A DNA stretch of 63,422 bases, the filler included, from Octopus bimaculoides (Eukaryota), in assembly GCF_001194135.2 (NCBI RefSeq). It is 6 parts of 5 records of this genome, joined end to end, with 100 filler letters (N's around TTAATTAATTAA, not from the genome) between each part and the next. Parts side by side here need not be neighbours in the genome. Positions count along the whole stretch, not along the records: positions 23,909 to 34,249 come from NC_068995.1; 5 more parts are not named here. One strand, given 5' to 3'. Positions within the stretch are counted from its first letter, which is position 1. Each line of letters opens with the position of its first letter. Positions 23,809-36,200 of this stretch are shown here, piece by piece. The position numbers were made by a program, and so were the translations under genes. Under the pieces are notes generated by a model. The model ran no database searches. It saw only the letters and a list, made by a program, of their open reading frames with translations, and was not told the origin of the DNA.

Positions 23809-24675
23809 NNNNNNNNNNNNNNNNNNNNNNNNNNNNNNNNNNNNNNNNNNNNTTAATTAATTAANNNNNNNNNNNNNNNNNNNNNNNNNNNNNNNNNNNN
23901 NNNNNNNNGACACGTAAAAGCACCCACTACACTCTCTGAGTGGTTGGCGTTAGGAAGGGCATCCAGCTGTAGAAACTCTGCCAAATCAGACTGGAGCCTG
24001 GTGTTGCCATCCGGTTTCACCAGTCCTCAGTCAAATCGTCCAACCCATGCTAGCATGGAAAGCGGACGTTAAACGATGATGATGATGATGATGATATATA
24101 AATGTAGGAGGTTGAAAAGGAACACATGAGTTGATATGTATTAGGAAAATAGACAAGGTAGAAAATGCTAAAATAGTTTTATCATGAAGAACATTTTAGT
24201 ACCGGTTTCAGTCTTTGCAACTTTTTCAACTTAGAGAAAAGCATGAAAAATAATTAAATTGTGGAAAAATTAAATGAAATGTTTTTTAAACATATTTCCA
24301 TAATTTTCAAATGCAAGGGACATTTTCCTCTTTTTCTATCTGTCTCTGTCTCTCTTTTTTTACTCTTGTGGGTTCTAAGTAGTTAGCAGCAGCTAGGTTG
24401 ATATGAATTCTTGTCTTTGATTGTTTAAGCAGCAGCAGTAGTAGTAGTAGTAGTAGAGAAAGGAGGCGGCGGAGAAGCAGAAGAAGGAAGAAGAGAAAGA
24501 ATAAAAATGCGGGAATGGTATGACAGTAGCAGGATGTTGGTGGAATCCTCTTAAATGGTCAAGTGACCTATTAAAAGTGACCTGTTGTGGTTATAATAGT
24601 GATTGGAATTATATGGAATAAATTTATGTGAAGTGACTGTTTTGAATATATTGTTTTCAATATTTGCGTGGGTGT

Positions 24676-25340
24676 TATTCTAAGGCCCTGGTGATAGTGT
24701 CATTTGTTGTGGGTGCATTCAAAAGGGGTTGGTACTTTGTGATAAAGAATGACTCTTTACTAATGTGCTGACTACAGAAGGTATCGTCCCTGAATTGATA
24801 GAGGGGGAAAATTCTGAAGCTGGGTTGTTTGTTATTGGCACAAACGTCGATGTGCTTGCTGAATGCTATTTTTCTGTTTTTCGGAATTTTGATCTGGGAT
24901 CTGTGCAGAGCCATCTTTTCATGTAGAATATTTTTGGTTTGGCCTATGTATTGCTCTCAACACCCAGAGCAGGTTAATAATTATATCAGGTTCTCCGAAG
25001 CACATGTGAAGTTGCTTTTCGCTGTGAAATGTTGACCCTGTTTGAAAGAGAATTCTGATCCCTCAATTAAGCTGACACATATACCACAGTTAGGTCTTCC
25101 GCATTTTTTCTACTGACGGCTTCAGTGTTGTTGTTGAGCGTATTCGGGTTTGCATTAGGAGACTTTTCATAGATTTGGGCTGTCTTTTGTTTTTTTATGA
25201 TGGTGTGCGTTTGGAGAATTAAATTCATTCTGTGGTCCCTTTTTAGTAGGAGAATGTTTTGGAGGATGGTGTCGAAAGCTTCATTGTTAAGAGGGTTGTG
25301 TGTTGAGATGTATGGTAGGGCTTTTAGTTGTAAATGCTAT
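24676..25340 (-). mobile_element. Penelope-like element 3' fragment (post-RT linker plus GIY-YIG endonuclease)
   Basis: LPYISTHNP, CG...CVSLIEG..F.F..G..F....NFTC..ENLI*LLTC.GC*EQYIGQT (GIY-YIG), KESFFITKYQPLLN. Confidence 0.85.
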
Positions 25341-25738
25341 TCCCCAACTCAGTCGAGGGGTCTTGACTTATAAATCATTTGATGACCTCACTGTTGCTGG
25401 TGCCACGCAAAAAGCATCCAGTACACTGTAAAGTGGTTGGTGTTATGAAGGGGCATTCAGCCATAAAAACCTGCCAAAGCAGACAGTAGAGCTTGTTGCA
25501 GTCTTCTGATTTGTCTGCTCCTGTCAAACCATGCAACCCATGCCAGCAAAGGAAACAGAAGTTAAATGACGATGATGATGATGAATAATCTGAGATTAGA
25601 CTATGTCACTCAATTTACCTCGGTTTTCCTCTGCCATGGGTACCTTTTTCTTTTCTTTTTTTTTTCGGCACATAGCACAGATACCTTAAGAAACAGGATA
25701 TTCAATTACTCTGACAAAGGGAAAGCATCCAAACAGAA

Positions 25739-26188
25739 TACAAGGGTGGGCTGAAAAGTTCACATGCCAACTATGAAGGAGTGATGCTAGAGCTGTGAAA
25801 TCTTGCATGCATTAATTTCAACTTCTTGATAATGGTATTGTTTCTTTTCAGGTAAACTGATGTCTCACTGTTCAAAGAATACTTCAAAAGTAACTTGTAG
25901 CAACTTCTCTTGAAAACTGATAAAATTTGGCATTGTGGTATTATCAAGTACCAGTAGAAAAATGGTTTAGTCTCCAAGGACACTCATGATGACATAGTTG
26001 CTACATTAAGAGATGATGCTCCAGCTTTTATATCAACAATGTAAAAGTAGGCAGCTGAATTTAGGAGAGGAAGGGAGAGCTTTCAAGATGACCCATGGTC
26101 TGGATGTCCCGCAACTGCCGCTGAGGAAAACACTGATCATGTCCACCACATGCTGATGGATAACAGGCGATTAACAGTAAACCAAATG
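25739..26188 (+). mobile_element. mariner-family 5' fragment (TIR plus HTH region)
   Basis: TA-CAAGGGTGGGCTGAAAAGTT terminus; decayed ..AEFRRGRESFQDDPWSGCP..EENTDHV..MLMDNRRLTV. Confidence 0.8.
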
Positions 26189-26260
26189 AGGTCTAATTGT
26201 GAAGGGTACCCGTGGAAGGGGTAGACCCAAGAAGACGTGACAAAGTGGTGAGAAAGTTAT
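26189..26260 (+). mobile_element. RTE LINE C-terminal fragment
   Basis: VKGTRGRGRPKKT motif. Confidence 0.6.
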
Positions 26261-26387
26261 TGATGGCCTATGTGCTGTAGGGAGTGAAGAGCTTAAATAC
26301 AGTTTGATAGTGTGATAAAGTACTGTGAAAACCAGAGGTGAAGTGGATTAGAGACATTGGAAGAGCAACATAATTTCAAATACTTAC

Positions 26388-26842
26388 GGTGATAGGAAGT
26401 GCTGCCTCAGTTGTTGGAGACGGTAAGGACTTGGCAGAACTAGATGGTGGAGCAGGGGTAATAAGGATCTTTTTATGGGTTTTCCTTTCAAAACTATATT
26501 TTGGAAGCTTAGCACCTCGAGTATGAATTTCTGAACGTGGAGGAACATGGTGAGTGTATTTTCTTTTAATTGCAGGTTTACTATCAGAAGTCTTTTTAGT
26601 ATCACTTTTGGAGGAATTATTTTCACTGGATGGTGAGGCAGACCGCTTCTCAGAGACAGTGTTGGAATTTTCAGCAGTAACATCATCAGCATAAATATCA
26701 TCCATGGACGATCTTGATTTACGACTCAAACTTCCTTTCCTTTTCTTTCTTCGTTTCCCAGTTTTCCTAGGACCATTCTCTAGATTGCTGTGACCTCCTG
26801 GAGGTCGACCGATTTTCCGCTTTTTCTTACCATAGTAATAGG
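26388..26842 (-). CDS. SFMBT: SFMBT homolog, exon encoding basic/Ser-rich linker between SLED and SAM domains
   Basis: catttccAG acceptor; the junction codon A|CC gives TKYTYYYGKKKRK, as in SFMBT2 (TKYTYYYGKRKK). Open frame of 455 nt ending ALPIT|gtaagta, phase 0. Confidence 0.92.
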
Positions 26843-28869
26843 CTGGAAATGTTGAGTAAAAAAGAGACAATAAAACAAGCAAGTCATGGTCAGGTGACAT
26901 ACTCTGCATATGATTTAAGAAAAAAGGAGAAAGAAAAGAAAAACAGTGCAATTATTTCTCAATCTATAAATACTCACATCAGCACACAATTTGTTAAGAT
27001 GCAATTTGTAGATTATGTAAAAACATTTTAAAAGAAGTTGTTACATTCAAGGAACAACGAACAAAAGATTAACTGCTCAGCTATTATACATACACACACA
27101 CCAGAAAATCCAGCTAGAATCACCCTTTTGACTAACATGGCAGCGAGCTGGCAGAACCGTTAGCACGCTGGGCGAAATGCTTAGCGGTATTTCGTCTGCC
27201 GTTACGTTCTGAGTTCAAATTCCGCAAAGGGTCGATAAATTAAGTACCAGTTACACACTGAGGTCGATGTAATCGACTTAATCCCTTTGCCTGTCCTTGT
27301 TTGTCCCTTCTATGTTTAGCCCCTTGTGGGCAATAAAGAAATAAGAATCACTCTTTTGACTAACATTTCTTAACCCTGTCACACTATATTCCCACTGTAG
27401 CAGGAATAGGTTAAACGTCATCTCTATTAGATTCTCAGTAAAACAGTAATGAACGAAACACGTAGAAAAAGAAGATATAACTGATTCTGTCGATTGGTTT
27501 GTCTGCTATCATTACTCTTGAGCTGTATTTCTTCTATTTGTTTGTCATTTGACTGTGGCCATGCTAGAGCACCACTTTTAGTCGAACAAATCGAACCCAG
27601 GACTCATTTAGAATGAGAAGTGTAAAGAGGACATTCGTAGGATTTGAACTCAAGAAGTAAAGTTTGAAACTAAATACTACAAGGTTCATTACTTTCTGAA
27701 GCATTATATATTTAACAAATGTCTTATTTGCATCACTAAGTTCAAATCCTCGAAACTAGACCAAGAAATCCTCAATATAATTCTAATTCATCATAAAGTC
27801 ACCAAGCTCAACTATCACAAAATTTGAAGGGACATAACTAAATACTGCAAGATATCTTGTTCATTATTGTTCTAATATTGATATAAGGCAAAAATATGGA
27901 GAGGAGTGAGTTAAATTTATAACAAATCCAGGACTTGAAAGGGTACTTGTTTCATTAACTACGGAGGGGTGAGAAGCAAAATCAATAATTATAAAACTAT
28001 TTGAAGTACAACAAATATATTTTTATTGAATACTCTCTTACCCACCCAACCGCAGACAAAAAAAAACCTATATGAAAAGAAGCGAATTATATTTGAATAG
28101 GAAAATGAAGTGGTACGAAAAATACACTGTAGTTTATAAAAGTAATACTGATAGAGTTCCTAGTTGCAAGGGAGATAATCAATGGAAGCTAATAAAATCT
28201 TAATGCATTACAATAGAATTTCTTGCTTTTAATTATGGATTAAACTGTGTAACTGTAACTTATAGCTGTCACCTTTTTAAATTTACCGCCTTATTTCCAC
28301 ACAAGAATAGATAACTGGCTGGTTTGGCTGGCTGGGATTTTAGGAAGATTATTTCTTTTTTAAATAAATTTGTACATTTCTGTATTAATGAAGCAATTAT
28401 TTTACACCTGAATGCCCTTTTCTACACTGACCACAAATTAGAAGTAGGACCTTGTTAATGAAACAGACTTAAAATTAAACTCTGTGCCAAGAAATAGGAC
28501 ACAATGAGACTACCAAAAGAGAGAGAGAGAACACAGTATGACTCAAACCTCATGAGGAGTATCTTCACTCTGTGACCACTGCACTCCAGTTCATAGATGA
28601 GAGGCAGATAAAAGAACAGAAGTGACATATACAAGCACAAAACTTGCTAAATGTTTAGCAGATCTGAAATTATTCAAGGACACTGAAGCATTTTACATCA
28701 TGGAGGTAACATGACAGCTGCTTCAAATGTACACTTCCTGACCACTCGGTTCCATGTTCAGTCCTACTGTGGGGTACCTTGGATTTGTGTCTTCTGCCAT
28801 AGCCTTGGGCTGACCAAAGACTTGCAGATGGATTTGGTAGACAGAAACAGAAAGTAGCCCATTGCATGT

Positions 28870-28900
<31 letters not shown>

Positions 28901-29678
28901 CATTGTCTCCTTGTCTTGACATTGCATGATTGTTGTAAATGAGTACCACCACCATACAAGCAGTGTCCATTTTCAATCTCCCTTGAAAACATGTTCAGTC
29001 ATGAGGAAATATTACACTGGAAACAGGTGGAGGTTGGTGACAGAAAGGGCATCTGGTTGTAGGAAAAATTTACCTCAACAAATTCTGTTCAACCCATGCA
29101 AGCATGGAAAAGTGTATGTTCAAACAATGATGCTCGTGACAACATAGGCTATCAAATTTACCTTTACTTAACATCACAACAGTATCATTGATTAAGCCAT
29201 AGTAACACAGTCACTGACACTACTCTTCTAATACAAGGAAATATAGTATCTGTATCCCAGTCATAAAATTACAACGAAACACTAAAAATGAAACCAAATC
29301 AAAGAGAAGCAAATATAACTGTGTATTTTAAATGGCTATCACAATGGTTTTAACACCAGTCATTCCAAGACTTGGAAGGAACCACTGCACCATCTCATCA
29401 CCACTCGTGTCTCAATCTTATCTATTGGTCCCAACATCCTTAAATCTGATCTTACTTCTCACACTTTCAATTGTTACCCATACATCCACTGGCAGCTCAA
29501 GACACATTTTGAACTCTCGTTATTCGTACTTGCCCCATTCATAAAACATGCTCATACCAACACAGCTAATTTATCCTCTTGCCGTCTTTAAACACCCACC
29601 AGGTCTCTCACCTGACTTCTGCTCCATCATTCAAACGGGTTAAAGCAAAATCCTTTCACACTTCCTATACATACTTAC

Positions 29679-29854
29679 TATATTTTGTTTTGGTGAGTTG
29701 AGAGCAGTTTTCGGGACAGTCATCATCAATACAGTGTGGACTAATCAAATTCGGGCAACATTCAAGCTTAATACATATCTGTCGACAGAACTCGTCAAGC
29801 TGTTTCACATTTCGGCACAGCTCAACAGCAGCACGATAACTCTTGCCCTTGTAT
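29679..29854 (-). CDS. SFMBT: SFMBT homolog, internal exon encoding C-terminal half of SLED domain (missed by ORF track)
   Basis: tttttcgttatttAG acceptor; reads (K)YKGKSYRAAVELCRNVKQLDEFCRQICIKLECCPNLISPHCIDDDCPENCSQLTKTKY; A|gtaagt donor. 176 nt, phase 2 in, phase 1 out, continuing the frame of the 31045 exon. Matches SFMBT YRGKTYRAVVKI...KLECCPNL...CPENCS..TKTKY. Confidence 0.95.
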
Positions 29855-31044
29855 CTAAATAACGAAAAAGAAAAGAAAAAAATTGTAGTTGTAACAATAA
29901 TTTCTTACATTGTCAATAATAATTAATAATAATAATTTCTCTGTCAGGTAGACATGGGTATGTAATTGAGCAGTTTGCATGCCAGCCTCATACTTTCGGG
30001 TTCAATCCCACTGCGTGGTAACTTGGGCAAGTGTCTTCGGCTACAACTCTGGGCGAATCAAAGCCTTGCAAGTGAATTTGGTAGACAGAAACTGAAAGAA
30101 GCCTATGGCTTGTGCATCCATGTGTGTGTGTGGTTGTCTTGATATTCATGACAGTTGTAAGTGAAAGTAACCATCATCCAAGTGGTGTCATTCATTTCCA
30201 ATCCTCTAGGAAAACATGTCTGGTCCAGGGAAAATATTCCCTTACTTGGTGAGGATCAGCAACAGGAAGAGAATCTGACCATAGAACTCATCATCCTCAT
30301 CATCATCGTTTAACGTCCGTTTTCCATGCTGGCATGGGTTGAACAGGCCACCCATGCAAGCAGGAAAATGGTGGTGGTAGTGGTGATGATGCACAAGGAA
30401 GAAAATTTTTTGAAGGACAAACAGCAGTGATTATATCAAGCATACAGTTGACAGCTACTTTACAGATCCAAGATAAATGAAAGGCAAAGGTATTGATGGG
30501 AAGATTTGAACTTAGAACATAAAAATATTAACTGGAACAAGGTATTTTGTCCTGCATTCTTTCATCATCACTATCATCATTTGATGTCCACCTTCCATGC
30601 AGGCATGAGTTGGACGGTTTGACAGGAGCCAGCCAGGTAGAAGACTACTCCAGGCAACTGTCTGTTTTGACTGGGTTTTTACAGCTGGATGCCCTTCCTA
30701 ACACTAATCACTATGCAGAGTAGACAGAGGGATTTTTACATGGCACCAGCACAGGCGGGATCAGTTTTGGCATGGTTTTTACAGCTGGATACCCTTCCAA
30801 ATGCCAACCACTTTACAGTGTAGACTGAATGCTTCAATCATTTTCTAATACAGAACAGACCTTAAATCCATCAACTCTGAGACCTGGCTATTAACAAAAA
30901 TTGACCATTAAAGTAGAGCCCCAGTGTTGGAGGGCCTACGAAGGTCATAGGTAAAGCTTAGTCTTCTTACTAACCCAGTAAGAAAAAAAAGACAAAGACA
31001 ACACCCTAAGATGTAAGATGAAGAAAAAAGGAAAAATGACTTAC

Positions 31045-31282
31045 TTTGCTTTTAAAACTTGTTGATGCATGTTAGGGTTGTCTTCTCCATCCACTTGTAA
31101 CTCACGTAACACACGACTGGATTTATAGGCCACATTAATCAACATAGTCAGTACTTCCGTCATGACTAGTTTGATGGGGCCAGGACCAATTGATTTAGGC
31201 AGCTCAGCTATGCGACTCTTTGCCAGATAGGGACCAGAAAAGCAACGGTGATTGTAGTATATCTTAGGGCACCACGTGTCCT
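31045..31282 (-). CDS. SFMBT: SFMBT homolog, internal exon encoding N-terminal half of SLED domain
   Basis: Translation [62 protein letters not shown]...VLKAK closely matches the vertebrate SFMBT1/2 SLED sequence as I recall it ([31 protein letters not shown]...LKAK). Polypyrimidine tract plus tacAG acceptor; AA|gtaagt donor. 238 nt, phase 1 in, phase 2 out. Confidence 0.95.
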
Positions 31283-33038
31283 CTGTAGAGATAGAAATAA
31301 AGACACAAATTTTTTTTAAATGCAAGGAAATAGATGATTATTAAAATAGTTTAAAAGTTTTTGACATGTATCGTAACAGTATAATGATACAATAACAGAA
31401 TGATATTGCTCTATATTTCTAAAACAATGGATTTTTTAAAATTTCGAAAGGAAGTTCAAGCAATTATATCAATCCAAAATTTGATTGAAACTTATTTTAT
31501 CAACCTTGCAAGGATGAAAGGCAAAGCTAATCATGATAGGATTTGAACTCAGAATGTGAAGGGACAACTAAATATTGCAATGCACTTTGTTCATCACTAT
31601 CAATTCTGATAACCTGTCACTCTATAAAATAACAGTTTCAAATTTTGGCTCAAGGCCAGCAATTTTAGGGAGATGGGGTATTTCAATGACATCTCTCCCA
31701 GTGCTCAATTGGTACTTATTTTATCACCTCATCCTCAACTTGGTACTTATTTAATTGACTCGAAAGGATGAAAGGCAAAGTCAACTCCAGTGAAATATGA
31801 GCACAGAACATGAAAAGCTAAAAAGAAAGTAGTTAAGCATTTTGTCCAACATTTTAAAAATATCTCTTTAAAATTCTTAAAGTTTAATAATTAGAAACTA
31901 AAACAAACACCTTACGACAGTTAATAAATATGTTAAAATGAAGCAATATTTACCTTCAATATTGACATTTTTAATTTTATTGTATGTATCTGTGGCTGAT
32001 AAATGACTTTCAATTGTCACTGGTCTACAATAAAAAGAATATAACTTGATGACAACATGAAACTTAAGCCAATATAGTCAGTATTATTTAAACAAAGTAA
32101 TAAAGAACCATTGTGTTAGACTACAGCAATAAATCATCACCATTTTACATCGATTTTTTCCAATACCAGTATGCTAGTTAGAGAGGTCTATTCCAAAACT
32201 TCTCTCCACTTGCTGTAGTCCATCACCTGATATATATACAACAAAGAAAATTATTAAGCTTTTTGTTCTGTATGTCATGTGGATTCCCTTTTTTGAATGC
32301 TCTTCTTCTCATCAACCATTAGAAAACGCACTCTGAATATGTTTTATTTTTGTGACTGACGCTAGAGAGGTTGCTCGTTAGAACCAAAGAGATCCTTCTA
32401 TTCTGTGTAAGCTTTTATACAGAGTTAGTGCTCTCCAAGACAAGATGCCCTTGCTACAGCTTGTTAAGTTTAAATCTTCAACATGTCTTCAATAAACTCC
32501 ATCAGATACATGCAATCATGGAAAGGTGAACATTAAAAAAAAAATCTTTAAAACTAAATCATGGCTTTTTTTATAGGGTTAAAATACATTAATGCAACAT
32601 GGTCTTAGAAACATCAAAATTAGGATGCCAATTAACCCTTTCACAACAAAATTGTAATGAAATACACCTACCTATGACTTGAAATAATCGCAGCTTGAAG
32701 GGATTTAGTAAAATAATTTTGTCATTATTCAGATGGAGCTTTAGACACAGTAAAATGAATCATATATGACCACTTTATAATGTGACAGGTTTTGTGTCAA
32801 AGGACAAGGGGTGGTCTCAGTTAAGTCGGTATAAAAACTTTAAAACAAACAGCCTCTGGCCATGATTTATGTATTTTCATCCATCAACATTATTCAATGT
32901 CTGTCTTCCATCCCAGCATGAGTCGGATGGCTCCATAGGATATGATAAATCGGAAGACCGCATTGTGAAACAATGTCTGCTTTAGCATGGTCTCTGTGAG
33001 CAAGAATGCAATGATTATGGGTGGGAAGTGAAAGAAAT

Positions 33039-33240
33039 TTTGTGTCATTATTTCTATCACTACAGAGGACATGTGGTGCCCTAAGATTTACTACAATCAT
33101 TGTTGCTTTTCTGGTCTCTGTCTGCAAAGAGTCACATAGCTGAGCTGCCTAAATCAATTGGTCCTGGCCCCATCAAACTAGTCATGACGTACGTACTGAC
33201 TATGTTGATTAATGTGACCTATAAATCCAGTCATGTGTTA
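33039..33240 (+). pseudogene. Inverted, 3'-truncated duplicate of the SFMBT SLED exon including its 3' splice site
   Basis: Manual alignment to the reverse complement of 31107-31309: 203 columns, 13 substitutions and a 1-nt deletion (~93%). Perfect 55-nt core at 33135-33189; no donor site; frameshifted. Confidence 0.95.
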
Positions 33241-36200
33241 TTTATAGTTGTGATAGAATGGTAGCAGAGAGTAACAGGGTCCAAAGCTAGTGATATTGGA
33301 GAGAGAAAAAGAGTCTTATAATCTTTTGCTGTACTTGAGAAGACACATCAAGCTGAGTAAAATTGCTGTCTTCCACACATATAGGCTCCTCCTTTCAGGT
33401 GCCAGTGCCACTTAAAAAGCACCGTGCCACTGCTGCATTAGCGCCTCTGTGCCAGTGCTGCATTAATGCACCCATACCAGCGCAGCATACACAGTGCCGG
33501 TGACACATAAAAATCACCCAGCACACTATGCTAAGGGCTTGGTGTTAGGAAGGGCATCCAGCCATAGAAACCATGCCACAACAGACAGCTGGAACCTGGG
33601 CAGCTCCCTGCTAGCCAGCTCCATGTCAAACCATCCAACTTATGCCAGCATGGAGAGTGGACATTAAACGGAGGTGATGATGAAGATGATTCATTTAGTG
33701 TCCATGTTCCATAGTGGCATAGGTTGGATGGCTTGACAAGATCTGATGGGCCCAAGGATAGCATCATGCTCCAATATCTACTTTGGTGCAGTGTCCACAG
33801 TCAGATGTCCTTACTCTTTCACTTGTTTCAGTCACTTGACTGTGGCCATGCTGGAGCACCGCCTCTAGTCGAGCAAATTGATCCCAGGACTTATTCTTTG
33901 TAAGCCTAGTACTTATTCTATCGGTCTCTTTTGCCGAACCGCTAGGTTACGGGGACGTAAACACACCACAATTGGTTGTCAAGCGATGTTGGGGGAACAA
34001 ACACAGACACACAAACATATACACATACATACATGTATATACATATATATATATATACACATATATACATATACATACATATATATATACATATACATAC
34101 ATATATATATATACATATATATACATACATATATATACATATATATACATATATATACATACATATATATACATTTATATACATACATATATATACATCA
34201 TATATACATATATATACACATATATACATACATATATATACATCATATANNNNNNNNNNNNNNNNNNNNNNNNNNNNNNNNNNNNNNNNNNNNTTAATTA
34301 ATTAANNNNNNNNNNNNNNNNNNNNNNNNNNNNNNNNNNNNNNNNNNNNTTCTTGTAAAATCATTCGATTTCATTGTACTGCCCTTTCTATGTATGTCCT
34401 TATGGATAATAAAAAAATTAAGAAACAGCACGCCGAGCGAAATGCTTAGCGGTATTTCGTCTGCCGTTACGTTCTGTGTTCAAATTCCGCCGAGGTCGAC
34501 TTTGCCTTTCATCCTTTCCGGGTCGATAAATTAAGTATCAGTTACGCACTGAGGTCGATATAATCGACTTAATCCCTTTGTCTGTCCTTGTTTGTCCCCT
34601 CTATGTTTAGCCCCTTGTGAGCAATAAAGAAATAAGAATCGTTAGCACACCGGGAAAAATGCTTCGTGGCATTTTGCCCGTCTTTGTGTTCTGAGTTTAA
34701 ATTCCGCCGAGCCTGATTTTGCCTTTCACCGTTTCGAGAACGATGGAATTAAGTATCAGCTATACACTCGGGTCGATGTAATCGACATAACCTTCCCCAG
34801 AAAATGCTGGTTTCGTACCAAGATGTGAAACCAGTATTACGTAACAGTTGTTAAATTGCAGTCCTGAGGTAATAAAAATTGTTGACAGCCTGCTTAATTT
34901 ATTATCTATTATTAACTAACTTGTCTACATAAATTAAACGGTAGTCAGCCACTATTTATTACACAACATACGTCCGACCAACGATTTTTTCTTTTATTTT
35001 AATCTACAGAATGAAGGCATCAGCGTTTAACCTATATTGCAACCACAAGTTCTTATTTATGGTTGCAATATGGATCCCTCATTACGTTTTACCGATAAAT
35101 CAACTAAAAGAGATTGTAAAGGCATTTGCTTACTTGTTGTAACACAATAAACTCCCTCTTATCCGATACTCAACCGGAAATTTTCAAGCAACCGACACTC
35201 AGGAAATGTGTTGCTACATGGAGTCAGGAGAATTTGTGCTAATTTGTGTTAATTGTCATTGTATTTAAAATGGATCGCTGCTTCTCCAAAGTACAATAAC
35301 TTATTTTACTGCATTAAGAATACCTATATTTTGTTAATAAAACATGTTCTCAAATTATATTTCCCGTTTCTCTCATTTCTACTATATTTGGAAAATTACC
35401 GATAATACTTACGTATAAATAGAGTTTTAATGCGTTTTGTAAGGTGTTAAGATAATTTCCAGATATCTGATCAAGAGATATCTGGAAAATTTAGTTATCT
35501 GGCAACCCTCTGGTCTCTGTGATGCCAGTTAAGAAGGAGATTTCTGTACTTGAAATAAATCATAATGCTGATGGAATTTACGAGCGATTACAATGAAAAT
35601 TTTATGAAACAATCAACGGATTTCTCATTGAAACGACTGCCAAGCTGCTTTAGATAGATATCTGTTGGAGGATCACGTACGCTGAAAAACGAAAGGCTGC
35701 AAAAGGTACTGGTTGGGCAATTTTGAGCATTTGGGGCGATATTAAAAGTAAACATTCTCTGCTTCCGTTATTTGTTTGGACAGATCTGTAGGATAGAGGA
35801 CATCTGGTGACCTCTTCATTACTTAATTACTGTGCATGGTTGCATTCGTTTCTGATTGTTCCTGTGGGTAATTCCCTTAACAATGACGACTTCCACATCA
35901 GCTTAGCCCAGTGTATTAGAGGCAGCAGTGTGCCAACCAATAAGGCGGCGAACTGGCCGACACGTTAGCACGCCGGGCGAAATACTTAGCGGCATTTCGT
36001 CTGTCTTTTGTTTCTAAGTTCAAATTCCGTCGAGGTCGACTCTGACTTTTATCCTTTCAGAGTCGATAAATTAGGTACCAGTTGCGAATTAATCGACTGG
36101 TCTCCTCCTCCAAAATTTCGGGCCTTGTACCTAGAGTAGAAAAGAATACTTTGGACGGGAAGGGTATTCACGGTTTGTCCTTGAACGACGGTCATTTTCT

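What the first reader, a model, noticed from the sequence alone, without database searches (positions are those of the whole stretch)
31107..33240. Inverted copy of the SFMBT SLED exon in the upstream intron: candidate built-in antisense/editing-complementary sequence
Seen: 33039-33240 (+) is a ~93% identical inverted copy of 31309-31107, covering the polypyrimidine tract, the AG acceptor and the first 176 nt of the exon, with a perfect 55-nt core. I found no upstream SFMBT exon between 31282 and the contig end, so the copy should be intronic and transcribed antisense ~1.73 kb before the exon. Established: long intramolecular dsRNA is an ADAR substrate, coleoid cephalopods recode mRNA extensively by A-to-I editing, and duplexes over 3' splice sites can alter exon inclusion. 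Inference: a local exon inversion-duplication created a ~200-bp exon-complementary stem that could drive editing and/or skipping of a Polycomb protein exon. Caveat: 4 of the 5 exon CpGs are lost in the copy, which looks like neutral decay.
Basis: partly seen in the sequence, partly recalled or inferred. Interest (0 to 1): 0.85.

Follow-up and report, generated by a model that had tools for sequence, protein, structure and literature searches.

The report
Decaying inverted exon copy in intron
A 211-base backwards copy of part of a Polycomb-type gene's exon really does sit in the intron just upstream and should pair with that exon in the unspliced RNA, but the copy looks like a slowly decaying duplication relic, not a purpose-built regulatory element.

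Summary
Bases 33031-33240 (+) are an inverted copy of 31317-31107 (211 columns, 15 substitutions and a 1-nt deletion, 92.4% identity, blastn E 8e-85). It covers 35 nt of intron (polypyrimidine tract and AG) and the first 176 nt of a 238-nt exon. That exon, joined to the next one, encodes a complete SLED domain, so the exon arm belongs to an intact MBT/SLED Polycomb-group gene on the minus strand. No coding exon was found between the exon and the piece's edge, so the copy is most likely intronic and antisense in the same pre-mRNA. Folding predicts a 191-bp stem (about -344 kcal/mol) that buries the acceptor and most of the exon. The copy behaves as neutral DNA: it has a frameshift, every polarisable amino-acid change is derived in the copy, 4 of 5 CpGs are lost, and three related loci have no such copy. 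My best reading is a lineage-specific local inverted duplication that incidentally makes a long dsRNA. That dsRNA is a likely substrate for promiscuous ADAR hyper-editing and may impair the 3' splice site. Nothing shows that it is a selected editing or skipping device. Editing, skipping, conservation in sister species and the cephalopod origin could not be tested here.

The parts
31107..31317 (-). Exon arm of the inverted repeat: 35 nt of the upstream intron (polypyrimidine tract, AG acceptor at 31284-31283) plus the first 176 nt of SLED exon 1
   Evidence: alignment; acceptor AG paired, 88% of the polypyrimidine tract paired in the MFE fold
33031..33240 (+). Inverted partial copy (pseudo-exon fragment). 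It reads like the exon on the + strand, so it is antisense to the exon in the minus-strand pre-mRNA. It has a 1-nt deletion at the position matching exon G31224, 15 substitutions, and 4 of 5 CpGs lost
   Evidence: tblastn hits in two frames across the frameshift; all polarisable changes derived in the copy
31318..33030 (-). 1713-nt spacer, the loop of the predicted hairpin. It is intronic, holds fragments of short repeated elements (about 31490-31600 and 31745-31810), and has no coding similarity
31045..31282 (-). SLED exon 1 (238 nt, SLED profile positions 1-72). Donor GT at 31044-31043. The length is not a multiple of 3, so skipping it would shift the frame
   Evidence: (all homologues end at ...LKAK, so the boundary is conserved)
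29679..29854 (-). SLED exon 2 (176 nt). It completes the SLED domain and is in frame with exon 1
26388..26842 (-). Next exon (455 nt): basic linker (YYYGKKKRKIGRPPGG ... KRKYTHHVPPRSEIHTRGAKLPKYSFERKTHKK), in frame, conserved in related loci
33490..33686 (+). SINE-like element in the upstream intron. It is the outer arm of a second, nested inverted pair that brackets the whole exon
   Evidence: I3; 170 predicted pairs with 30558-30757
30558..30757 (-). SINE-like element in the downstream intron, inverted relative to 33490-33686 (75% identity)

Best explanation
This is a real, lineage-specific, roughly 211-bp inverted partial duplicate of the 3' splice-site region and the first three quarters of SLED exon 1 of an MBT/SLED (SFMBT- or Scm-type) Polycomb-group gene. 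It lies 1.7 kb upstream in the preceding intron. It arose by a DNA-level local inverted duplication or templated repair event (inferred). It is not a retrocopy, not a transposon insertion and not an assembly error. Since then it has drifted as non-coding DNA while the exon stayed under protein-level constraint (shown). Because it is transcribed in the same pre-mRNA before the exon and in antisense orientation (inferred from the gene structure), the nascent RNA is predicted to form a 190-200-bp nearly perfect stem that buries the polypyrimidine tract, the AG acceptor and 176 nt of exon (shown in silico). From established ADAR biology, such a stem should be promiscuously hyper-edited on both arms wherever the gene and ADAR are co-expressed. 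The exon A31228, a Tyr codon opposite C with a 5' U, is the most favoured single site. The stem may also lower use of this 3' splice site, and skipping the 238-nt exon would shift the frame (inferred). I judge these effects to be incidental, tolerated by-products of a neutral duplication and not a selected editing-complementary sequence.
For: The repeat is real and highly significant. Homology ends sharply. The copy contains intron sequence and the acceptor, which excludes a retrocopy. No TIRs or target-site duplications flank it. The exon arm is part of an intact gene: three in-frame exons and a full SLED domain. The copy has a frameshift, and 7 of 7 polarisable amino-acid differences are derived in the copy at positions conserved in 16 homologues. 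Four of 5 CpGs decayed to TG/CA in a piece whose CpG observed/expected ratio is 0.36. Difference density does not differ significantly between the intronic part, 4/35, and the exonic part, 12/176 (P = 0.31). Three related loci have no inverted exon copy. The MFE fold of 2.3 kb and of 3.25 kb of pre-mRNA keeps 191 bp between the arms, about -344 kcal/mol for the arms alone, with the acceptor AG paired. The pair exceeds the published operational criterion for an intramolecular dsRNA editing substrate (>=80% identity, >=50 nt, within +/-2 kb), and the same paper regards coding edits in hyper-edited clusters as mostly non-adaptive (PMC9989829).
Against: I could obtain no RNA data, so transcription of the copy, duplex formation in vivo, editing and skipping are all unobserved. 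With only 7.6% divergence the stem would still be intact whether or not selection maintains it, so the decay signature does not exclude a function that needs only 'enough' complementarity. A small, poorly conserved exon or an alternative promoter between 31283 and 34249 cannot be ruled out by similarity searches. The source organism, and therefore its ADAR activity, is unverified. Long loops (1.7 kb) reduce the effect of structure on splice-site choice in some experimental systems (from my own knowledge, not checked here).
Confidence: 0.6

Rival explanations
1. One reading: the copy is a selected, built-in editing-complementary or splice-masking sequence that drives A-to-I recoding and/or regulated skipping of the SLED exon.
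For: The geometry is right: intronic, same transcript, antisense, a 191-bp predicted stem over the 3' splice site. An A:C mismatch sits at a Tyr codon with a 5' U, which is the context ADAR favours (established knowledge). Distant intronic duplexes are known to induce exon editing (PMC3479170).
Against: The copy has a neutral-type substitution spectrum, a frameshift and CpG decay. Three related loci lack it. Known selective ECS duplexes are short and imperfect, whereas 200-bp near-perfect stems give promiscuous hyper-editing that the field regards as mostly non-adaptive (PMC9989829). Skipping the 238-nt exon shifts the frame, so skipping would only lower output. No editing record for this gene was found.
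Confidence: 0.12
2. Inert relic: the copy is real, but the long-range duplex seldom forms in vivo, or forms without measurable consequence. Possible reasons are co-transcriptional protein loading, helicases, fast splicing, or no ADAR where the gene is expressed.
For: The loop is 1.7 kb. The gene is intact and conserved despite carrying the copy long enough to accumulate about 7.6% divergence, which suggests the copy does little harm.
Against: Inverted repeats separated by kilobases are the main edited substrates across animals (PMC9989829; PMC13019027 and PMC8330042, for their effects on splicing). The predicted stem is extremely stable and dominates the MFE fold.
Confidence: 0.2
3. A hairpin-RNA-like source of endogenous siRNAs: the stem is diced into small RNAs that silence the gene's own mRNA in trans.
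For: Drosophila hpRNAs arise from inverted duplications of their target genes (PMC10317233). The 55-bp perfect core and 191-bp stem are long enough for Dicer.
Against: One arm is the target's own exon inside its own pre-mRNA, not a separate hairpin locus. No small-RNA data exist. This pathway's use of nuclear intronic hairpins is not established in the presumed taxon (my own knowledge).
Confidence: 0.05
4. Assembly artefact: a false inverted duplication, for example from a chimeric long read or a haplotig join.
For: Inverted duplications are a known class of assembly error (my own knowledge). No raw reads are available here.
Against: Artefactual copies are near-identical and usually abut. Here the arms differ by 15 substitutions and an indel with a CpG-decay spectrum, are only 211 bp long with sharp ends, and are separated by 1.7 kb of unrelated sequence.
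Confidence: 0.03

Closest known systems
Intronic editing-site complementary sequences (ECS) and intronic editing-inducer hairpins, e.g. GRIA2 Q/R and R/G sites, and the Gabra-3 distant intronic element (PMC1920255, PMC3479170)
   Same: An intronic sequence in the same pre-mRNA pairs with exon sequence and creates the dsRNA that ADAR needs. It can lie hundreds to thousands of nt away. Editing and splicing of the adjacent intron are coupled.
   Different: Known ECS duplexes are short (tens of bp), imperfect, conserved and site-selective. This one is a roughly 200-bp near-perfect stem made from a copy of the exon itself. It is lineage-specific, decaying, lies upstream of the exon and covers the 3' splice site. 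No editing has been shown.
Inverted intronic repeat pairs (IRAlu / reverse-complementary matches) that are hyper-edited and promote loop-out exon skipping or back-splicing (PMC13019027, PMC8330042, PMC4201285)
   Same: A long intramolecular dsRNA forms from inverted repeats within one transcription unit, and promiscuous editing with effects on exon inclusion is expected. The nested SINE pair 33490-33686 / 30558-30757 at this locus is a textbook example of that architecture.
   Different: In the copy/exon pair, one arm is the exon and its acceptor, not a transposon in the opposite intron. The stem therefore masks the splice site and coding sequence directly; it does not merely loop the exon out.
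Drosophila hairpin RNA (hpRNA) loci born by inverted duplication of their target genes (PMC10317233, PMC10292708)
   Same: Origin: an inverted duplicate of genic sequence gives a long perfect-ish hairpin that is complementary to a protein-coding gene.
   Different: hpRNAs are separate transcription units with both arms non-coding and with documented siRNAs. Here one arm is the functional exon itself, and no small RNAs are known.

Membership tests
Intronic ECS / ADAR substrate hairpin | An intronic sequence complementary to exon sequence in the same transcript and in antisense orientation | tested here: met
   inverted repeat; no exon between the copy and the exon; gene on the minus strand. Intronic status is an inference from the gene structure.
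Intronic ECS / ADAR substrate hairpin | A stable duplex is predicted in the context of the pre-mRNA | tested here: met
   191 bp between the arms in the MFE folds of 2.3 kb and 3.25 kb; about -344 kcal/mol for the arms.
Intronic ECS / ADAR substrate hairpin | A-to-I editing is observed at the paired exon sites | not testable with these tools
   No RNA-seq access. Literature and supplement searches found no record for this gene.
Intronic ECS / ADAR substrate hairpin | The complementary element is evolutionarily conserved, or pairing is maintained by compensatory change | tested here: not met
   Three related loci lack it. The copy shows neutral-type decay with all polarisable changes on the copy side. 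Close relatives could not be obtained, so conservation among sister species remains open.
Flanking inverted-repeat loop-out / back-splicing architecture | Inverted repeats lie in the introns on both sides of the exon | tested here: not met
   For the copy/exon pair, one arm lies in the exon and acceptor. The neighbouring SINE pair 33490-33686 / 30558-30757 does meet the feature.
hpRNA / endo-siRNA locus | Small RNAs of siRNA size come from both arms, and the hairpin is an independent transcription unit | not testable with these tools
   No small-RNA data. Structurally, the hairpin is not independent of its target.
SFMBT (as opposed to Scm/SCMH1/SCML2) gene | SLED domain present | tested here: met
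   PF12140 positions 1-111 of 112, E 1.6e-37, on spliced exons 1+2. Closest solved structure: SCML2 SLED, 2MEM.
SFMBT (as opposed to Scm/SCMH1/SCML2) gene | Four MBT repeats upstream and a C-terminal SAM domain | not testable with these tools
   Both lie outside the 10.3-kb piece. Related loci have an MBT exon 2-4 kb upstream of the SLED exon, which fits either SFMBT or Scm-type genes.
Processed pseudogene (retrocopy) | The copy lacks intron sequence and starts or ends at exon junctions | tested here: not met
   The copy includes 35 nt of intron with the polypyrimidine tract and AG, and ends in mid-exon.
Transposon-captured gene fragment | Terminal inverted repeats, target-site duplication, or membership of a repeated element that flanks the fragment | tested here: inconclusive
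   No TIR or TSD at the ends, and the immediate flanks are single-copy within the piece. No repeat library for the source genome was available.
Assembly artefact (false inverted duplication) | Near-identical arms, usually contiguous | tested here: not met
   7.6% divergence with a CpG-decay spectrum, a 1.7-kb unrelated spacer and sharp ends. Raw reads are not available.

The most novel reading that the evidence does not exclude
The exon's own inverted duplicate is a newborn, self-made editing-complementary sequence. It turns the first SLED exon of a Polycomb-group gene into an ADAR target (for example Tyr-to-Cys at A31228) and/or gates use of its 3' splice site. That would tune the amount or the DNA-binding domain of a chromatin repressor after transcription, and it would be a snapshot of how ADAR substrates for coding exons can arise by local exon inversion-duplication.
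Probability: 0.1. Interest if true: 0.7.

Novelty: new member of a known kind. Interest (0 to 1): 0.3.

Why it matters
How dsRNA substrates for coding-sequence editing originate is poorly understood. Nearly all long intramolecular dsRNAs come from transposon pairs, and the known exon-pairing elements are short and ancient. An exon paired with a young inverted copy of itself would be a clean natural experiment. It makes sharp, cheap predictions: A>G clusters on both arms, a hot spot at one A:C mismatch, and frameshifting exon skipping. It also concerns the DNA-binding SLED domain of a Polycomb-group protein. If the copy proves to be only a tolerated relic, it is one more example that genes can carry long self-complementary stems over a splice site without losing function.

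Tried and rejected
1) A longer duplication. A SINE-like pair (30751-30831 / 33515-33595) lies on almost the same diagonal as the exon/copy pair, but the 275 nt in between are 25% identical, which is random. This is coincidence helped by a 100-nt tandem SINE unit, and I rejected it.
2) Retrocopy. Rejected, because the copy contains intron sequence and the acceptor.
3) Transposon capture. No TIR or TSD was found; this remains unresolved without a repeat library.
4) Assembly artefact. Rejected on the divergence pattern.
5) Gene conversion keeping a perfect core. The 55-nt run is not unusual (P = 0.11).
6) Orthologues from close relatives. The protein search gave nothing above 80% identity. A codon-degenerate DNA scan of the metagenome collection gave 0 hits. 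The bacterial, viral, plasmid and E. coli collections are irrelevant. So conservation in sister species and the cephalopod origin stay untested.
7) Whole-frame Pfam scans by DNA reference failed because of stop codons. I replaced them with ORF listing and tblastn using ORFs from related loci.
8) The Rfam and tRNA scans found only sub-threshold microsatellite artefacts.
9) Literature and supplement searches for SFMBT editing in cephalopods found no record, and Albertin 2022 had nothing on intronic pairing.
10) A mariner-like transposase remnant that I suspected at 26051-26221 (+) was not confirmed by Pfam.

Full report
OBSERVATION. The inverted repeat is real. The repeat finder lists 31107-31223/33124-33240 (117 nt, 96%) and 31224-31317/33031-33124 (94 nt, 89%) as the two longest inverted pairs in the piece. 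They are offset by one base, and a gapped alignment merges them into a single 211-column match with 15 substitutions and a 1-nt deletion in the copy. Self-blastn of the 10.3-kb piece gives 92.4% identity and E = 7.9e-85. Every other repeat in the piece is a SINE-like fragment of 68-93% identity. There is a perfect 55-nt core (31158-31212). The match covers the polypyrimidine tract, the AG acceptor (31284-31283) and the first 176 nt of the exon. Four of the 5 exon CpGs are lost in the copy. The match extends 8 nt further into the intron than stated, and the copy's frameshifting deletion was not mentioned. Homology ends sharply at 31107/33240: the next 275 nt are 25% identical.

WHAT THE EXON ARM IS. 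The minus-strand ORF across 31282-31045 matches Pfam SLED (PF12140) positions 1-72 at E = 3.8e-23. Sixteen homologous ORFs from eukaryotic contigs in public assemblies (68-80% identity) all begin their similarity near WCPKIY and all end at ...LKAK followed by a stop that comes from a GTAAGT-type donor, so the exon boundaries are conserved. I ran tblastn against the piece with ORFs from three related loci (L001-L003). This found two more exons on the minus strand. With splice sites placed, they are 29854-29679 and 26842-26388, and the three exons join into one open frame of 289 codons. Exons 1 and 2 together give a full-length SLED domain (1-111 of 112, E = 1.6e-37). The only solved relative is the SCML2 SLED domain, 2MEM. 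The exon arm is therefore part of an intact MBT/SLED Polycomb-group gene. Whether it is SFMBT proper or an Scm-type relative cannot be decided, because the MBT repeats and the SAM domain lie outside the piece.

WHERE THE COPY SITS. No ORF from the related loci hits anything between 31283 and 34249 except the copy itself, which appears in two frames because of the frameshift. None of the stop-to-stop ORFs there looks like coding sequence. In the three related loci an MBT exon lies 2-4 kb upstream of the SLED exon, whereas the piece ends 2.97 kb upstream. The SLED domain follows the MBT repeats in this protein family, so the gene must start further upstream. By inference, the copy is in the intron that precedes SLED exon 1. 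It reads like the exon on the + strand and the gene is on the minus strand, so in the pre-mRNA it is antisense to the exon and is transcribed about 1.7 kb before it.

WHAT THE COPY IS. It contains 35 nt of intron and the acceptor, so it was copied from DNA and not from spliced mRNA. It has no terminal inverted repeats or target-site duplication, and its immediate flanks are single-copy within the piece. That gives no sign of transposon capture, although no repeat library was available. It is not an assembly artefact of the usual kind, because the arms differ by 7.6%, are separated by 1.7 kb of unrelated sequence and end sharply. The differences are one-sided. At all seven amino-acid positions that 16 homologues can polarise, the exon keeps the conserved residue and the copy carries the change: R>C, P>L, Y>C, R>H, E>Y, A>T, R>H. 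The copy also has a frameshift. Four CpGs have become TG or CA, in a piece whose CpG observed/expected ratio is 0.36. Differences are not significantly denser in the intronic part, where both arms are free to change (4/35), than in the exonic part (12/176; P = 0.31). The perfect 55-nt run is within expectation (P = 0.11), so nothing points to gene conversion or to selection for pairing. None of the three related loci carries an inverted copy of its SLED exon. All of this fits a lineage-specific local inverted duplication or templated repair event that is decaying neutrally.

HOW IT MOST LIKELY WORKS. The MFE fold of the minus-strand RNA from 33300 to 31000 contains 191 base pairs between the two arms, and the arms alone give about -344 kcal/mol. 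In a wider fold (33750 to 30500) the same 191-bp stem persists. The acceptor AG is paired, 88% of the polypyrimidine tract is paired, and the donor is not part of the stem. At the RNA level the 15 mismatched positions are 3 G:U wobbles, 4 C:A with the A in the intronic arm, 2 A:C with the A in the exon arm (one intronic, and one at exon A31228 in a UAU Tyr codon with a 5' U), and 6 others. The exonic part of the stem has 46 adenosines. The pair far exceeds the operational definition of an intramolecular dsRNA editing substrate used in a 22-species editome study (>=80% identity, >=50 nt, within +/-2 kb). The same study concludes that coding edits inside hyper-edited clusters are mostly by-products (PMC9989829). 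From established ADAR biology I therefore expect promiscuous editing of both arms wherever the gene and ADAR are co-expressed, with A31228 (Tyr to Cys) as the most favoured single site. The stem may also compete with recognition of the 3' splice site. Exon 1 is 238 nt, so skipping it would shift the frame and could only lower functional output. These steps are inferred, not shown. Given the decay signature, I rate them as incidental consequences of a neutral duplication and not as a selected device.

A SECOND, NESTED STEM. The same fold predicts 170 pairs between a SINE-like element in the upstream intron (33490-33686) and an inverted copy in the downstream intron (30558-30757, 75% identity). 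This outer pair brackets the whole exon. That is the classical arrangement for loop-out exon skipping or back-splicing (PMC13019027, PMC8330042, PMC4201285). Any experiment on the exon copy needs to control for it.

COMPARISON WITH KNOWN SYSTEMS. The feature would work like an intronic ECS or editing-inducer hairpin (PMC1920255, PMC3479170) and like inverted-repeat dsRNAs. Its origin resembles that of Drosophila hpRNAs, which arise by inverted duplication of target genes (PMC10317233). It differs from each of these. It is much longer and more perfect than known ECS duplexes, it is not conserved, and it has no demonstrated editing. One arm is the exon and its acceptor, not a transposon in the opposite intron. 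It is not an independent hairpin locus. I file it as a new member of a known kind: dsRNA-forming inverted repeats within a transcription unit.

LIMITS. No cephalopod sequence, RNA-seq or small-RNA data are reachable with these tools. The protein collection holds nothing closer than 80% identity, and a codon-degenerate DNA scan of the metagenome collection found nothing. The cephalopod origin, conservation in sister species, editing and skipping therefore remain untested. The literature I could search has no record of editing in this gene.

VERDICT. The structural interpretation is supported, and the functional interpretation is unsupported and, on current evidence, less likely than a neutral relic with incidental dsRNA formation. 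Interest is modest: 0.3 overall. I give about a 10% chance that the copy is a selected, newborn ECS or splice gate, which would be considerably more interesting.

Noticed in passing
window 33490-33686 (+) and 30558-30757 (inverted): An inverted pair of SINE-like elements (75% identity, 170 predicted base pairs) lies in the introns on either side of SLED exon 1, nested outside the copy/exon stem. This is the classical architecture for loop-out exon skipping or circular-RNA formation.
   Followed up: partly
window 23909-24095, 25395-25585, 33495-33690 (+); 30561-30752, 30761-30834, 30288-30344 (inverted); fragment 29085-29132: A short interspersed repeat family (about 190 nt, ending in a GATGAT-rich tail) has at least six copies or fragments of 73-93% identity in 10 kb. 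A tandem pair of units 100 nt apart sits at 30661-30828. No tRNA-like match was found by ARAGORN or Rfam.
   Followed up: partly
window 31228 (minus strand A, codon UAU): The only exonic A:C mismatch in the predicted stem falls on a Tyr codon (GPYLAK; Y, F or L in homologues) with a 5' U. Editing there would give Cys, the same residue the copy encodes at that position.
   Followed up: partly
window 28756-29013 and 30000-30238: Direct repeats (about 260 nt, 68-75% identity, each with a (TG)n tract) flank SLED exon 2 (29854-29679) on both sides.
   Followed up: no
window 33990-34249: A long (ACAT/AT)n-type microsatellite at the edge of the piece produces many self-complementary 'palindromes' in the repeat finder and spurious sub-threshold Rfam hits (mir-297, mir-3149).
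   Followed up: yes
window 26051-26221 (+): A short ORF (…FQDDPWSGCPATAAEENTDHVHHMLMDNRRLTVNQM…) reminded me of the N-terminal region of mariner-type transposases, but Pfam gave no match. It lies in the intron downstream of the linker exon.
   Followed up: partly
window 31280-31288 (minus strand ...CTACAGAG|G...): Two AG dinucleotides lie 2 nt apart at the acceptor (CAGAG). The frame across the exons fits the upstream AG (exon start 31282); using the second AG would shift the frame.
   Followed up: no
window 23909-34249: The piece is AT-rich (37.6% GC) and strongly CpG-depleted (observed/expected 0.36). This fits germline methylation of the gene body and the CpG decay seen in the copy.
   Followed up: partly
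L001 15152-16336 (-); L002 16014-20249 (+): The related loci carry large ORFs with HTH_animal (L001) and YqaJ (L002) Pfam hits in introns or flanks of the homologous gene. These are probably transposon-derived.
   Followed up: no
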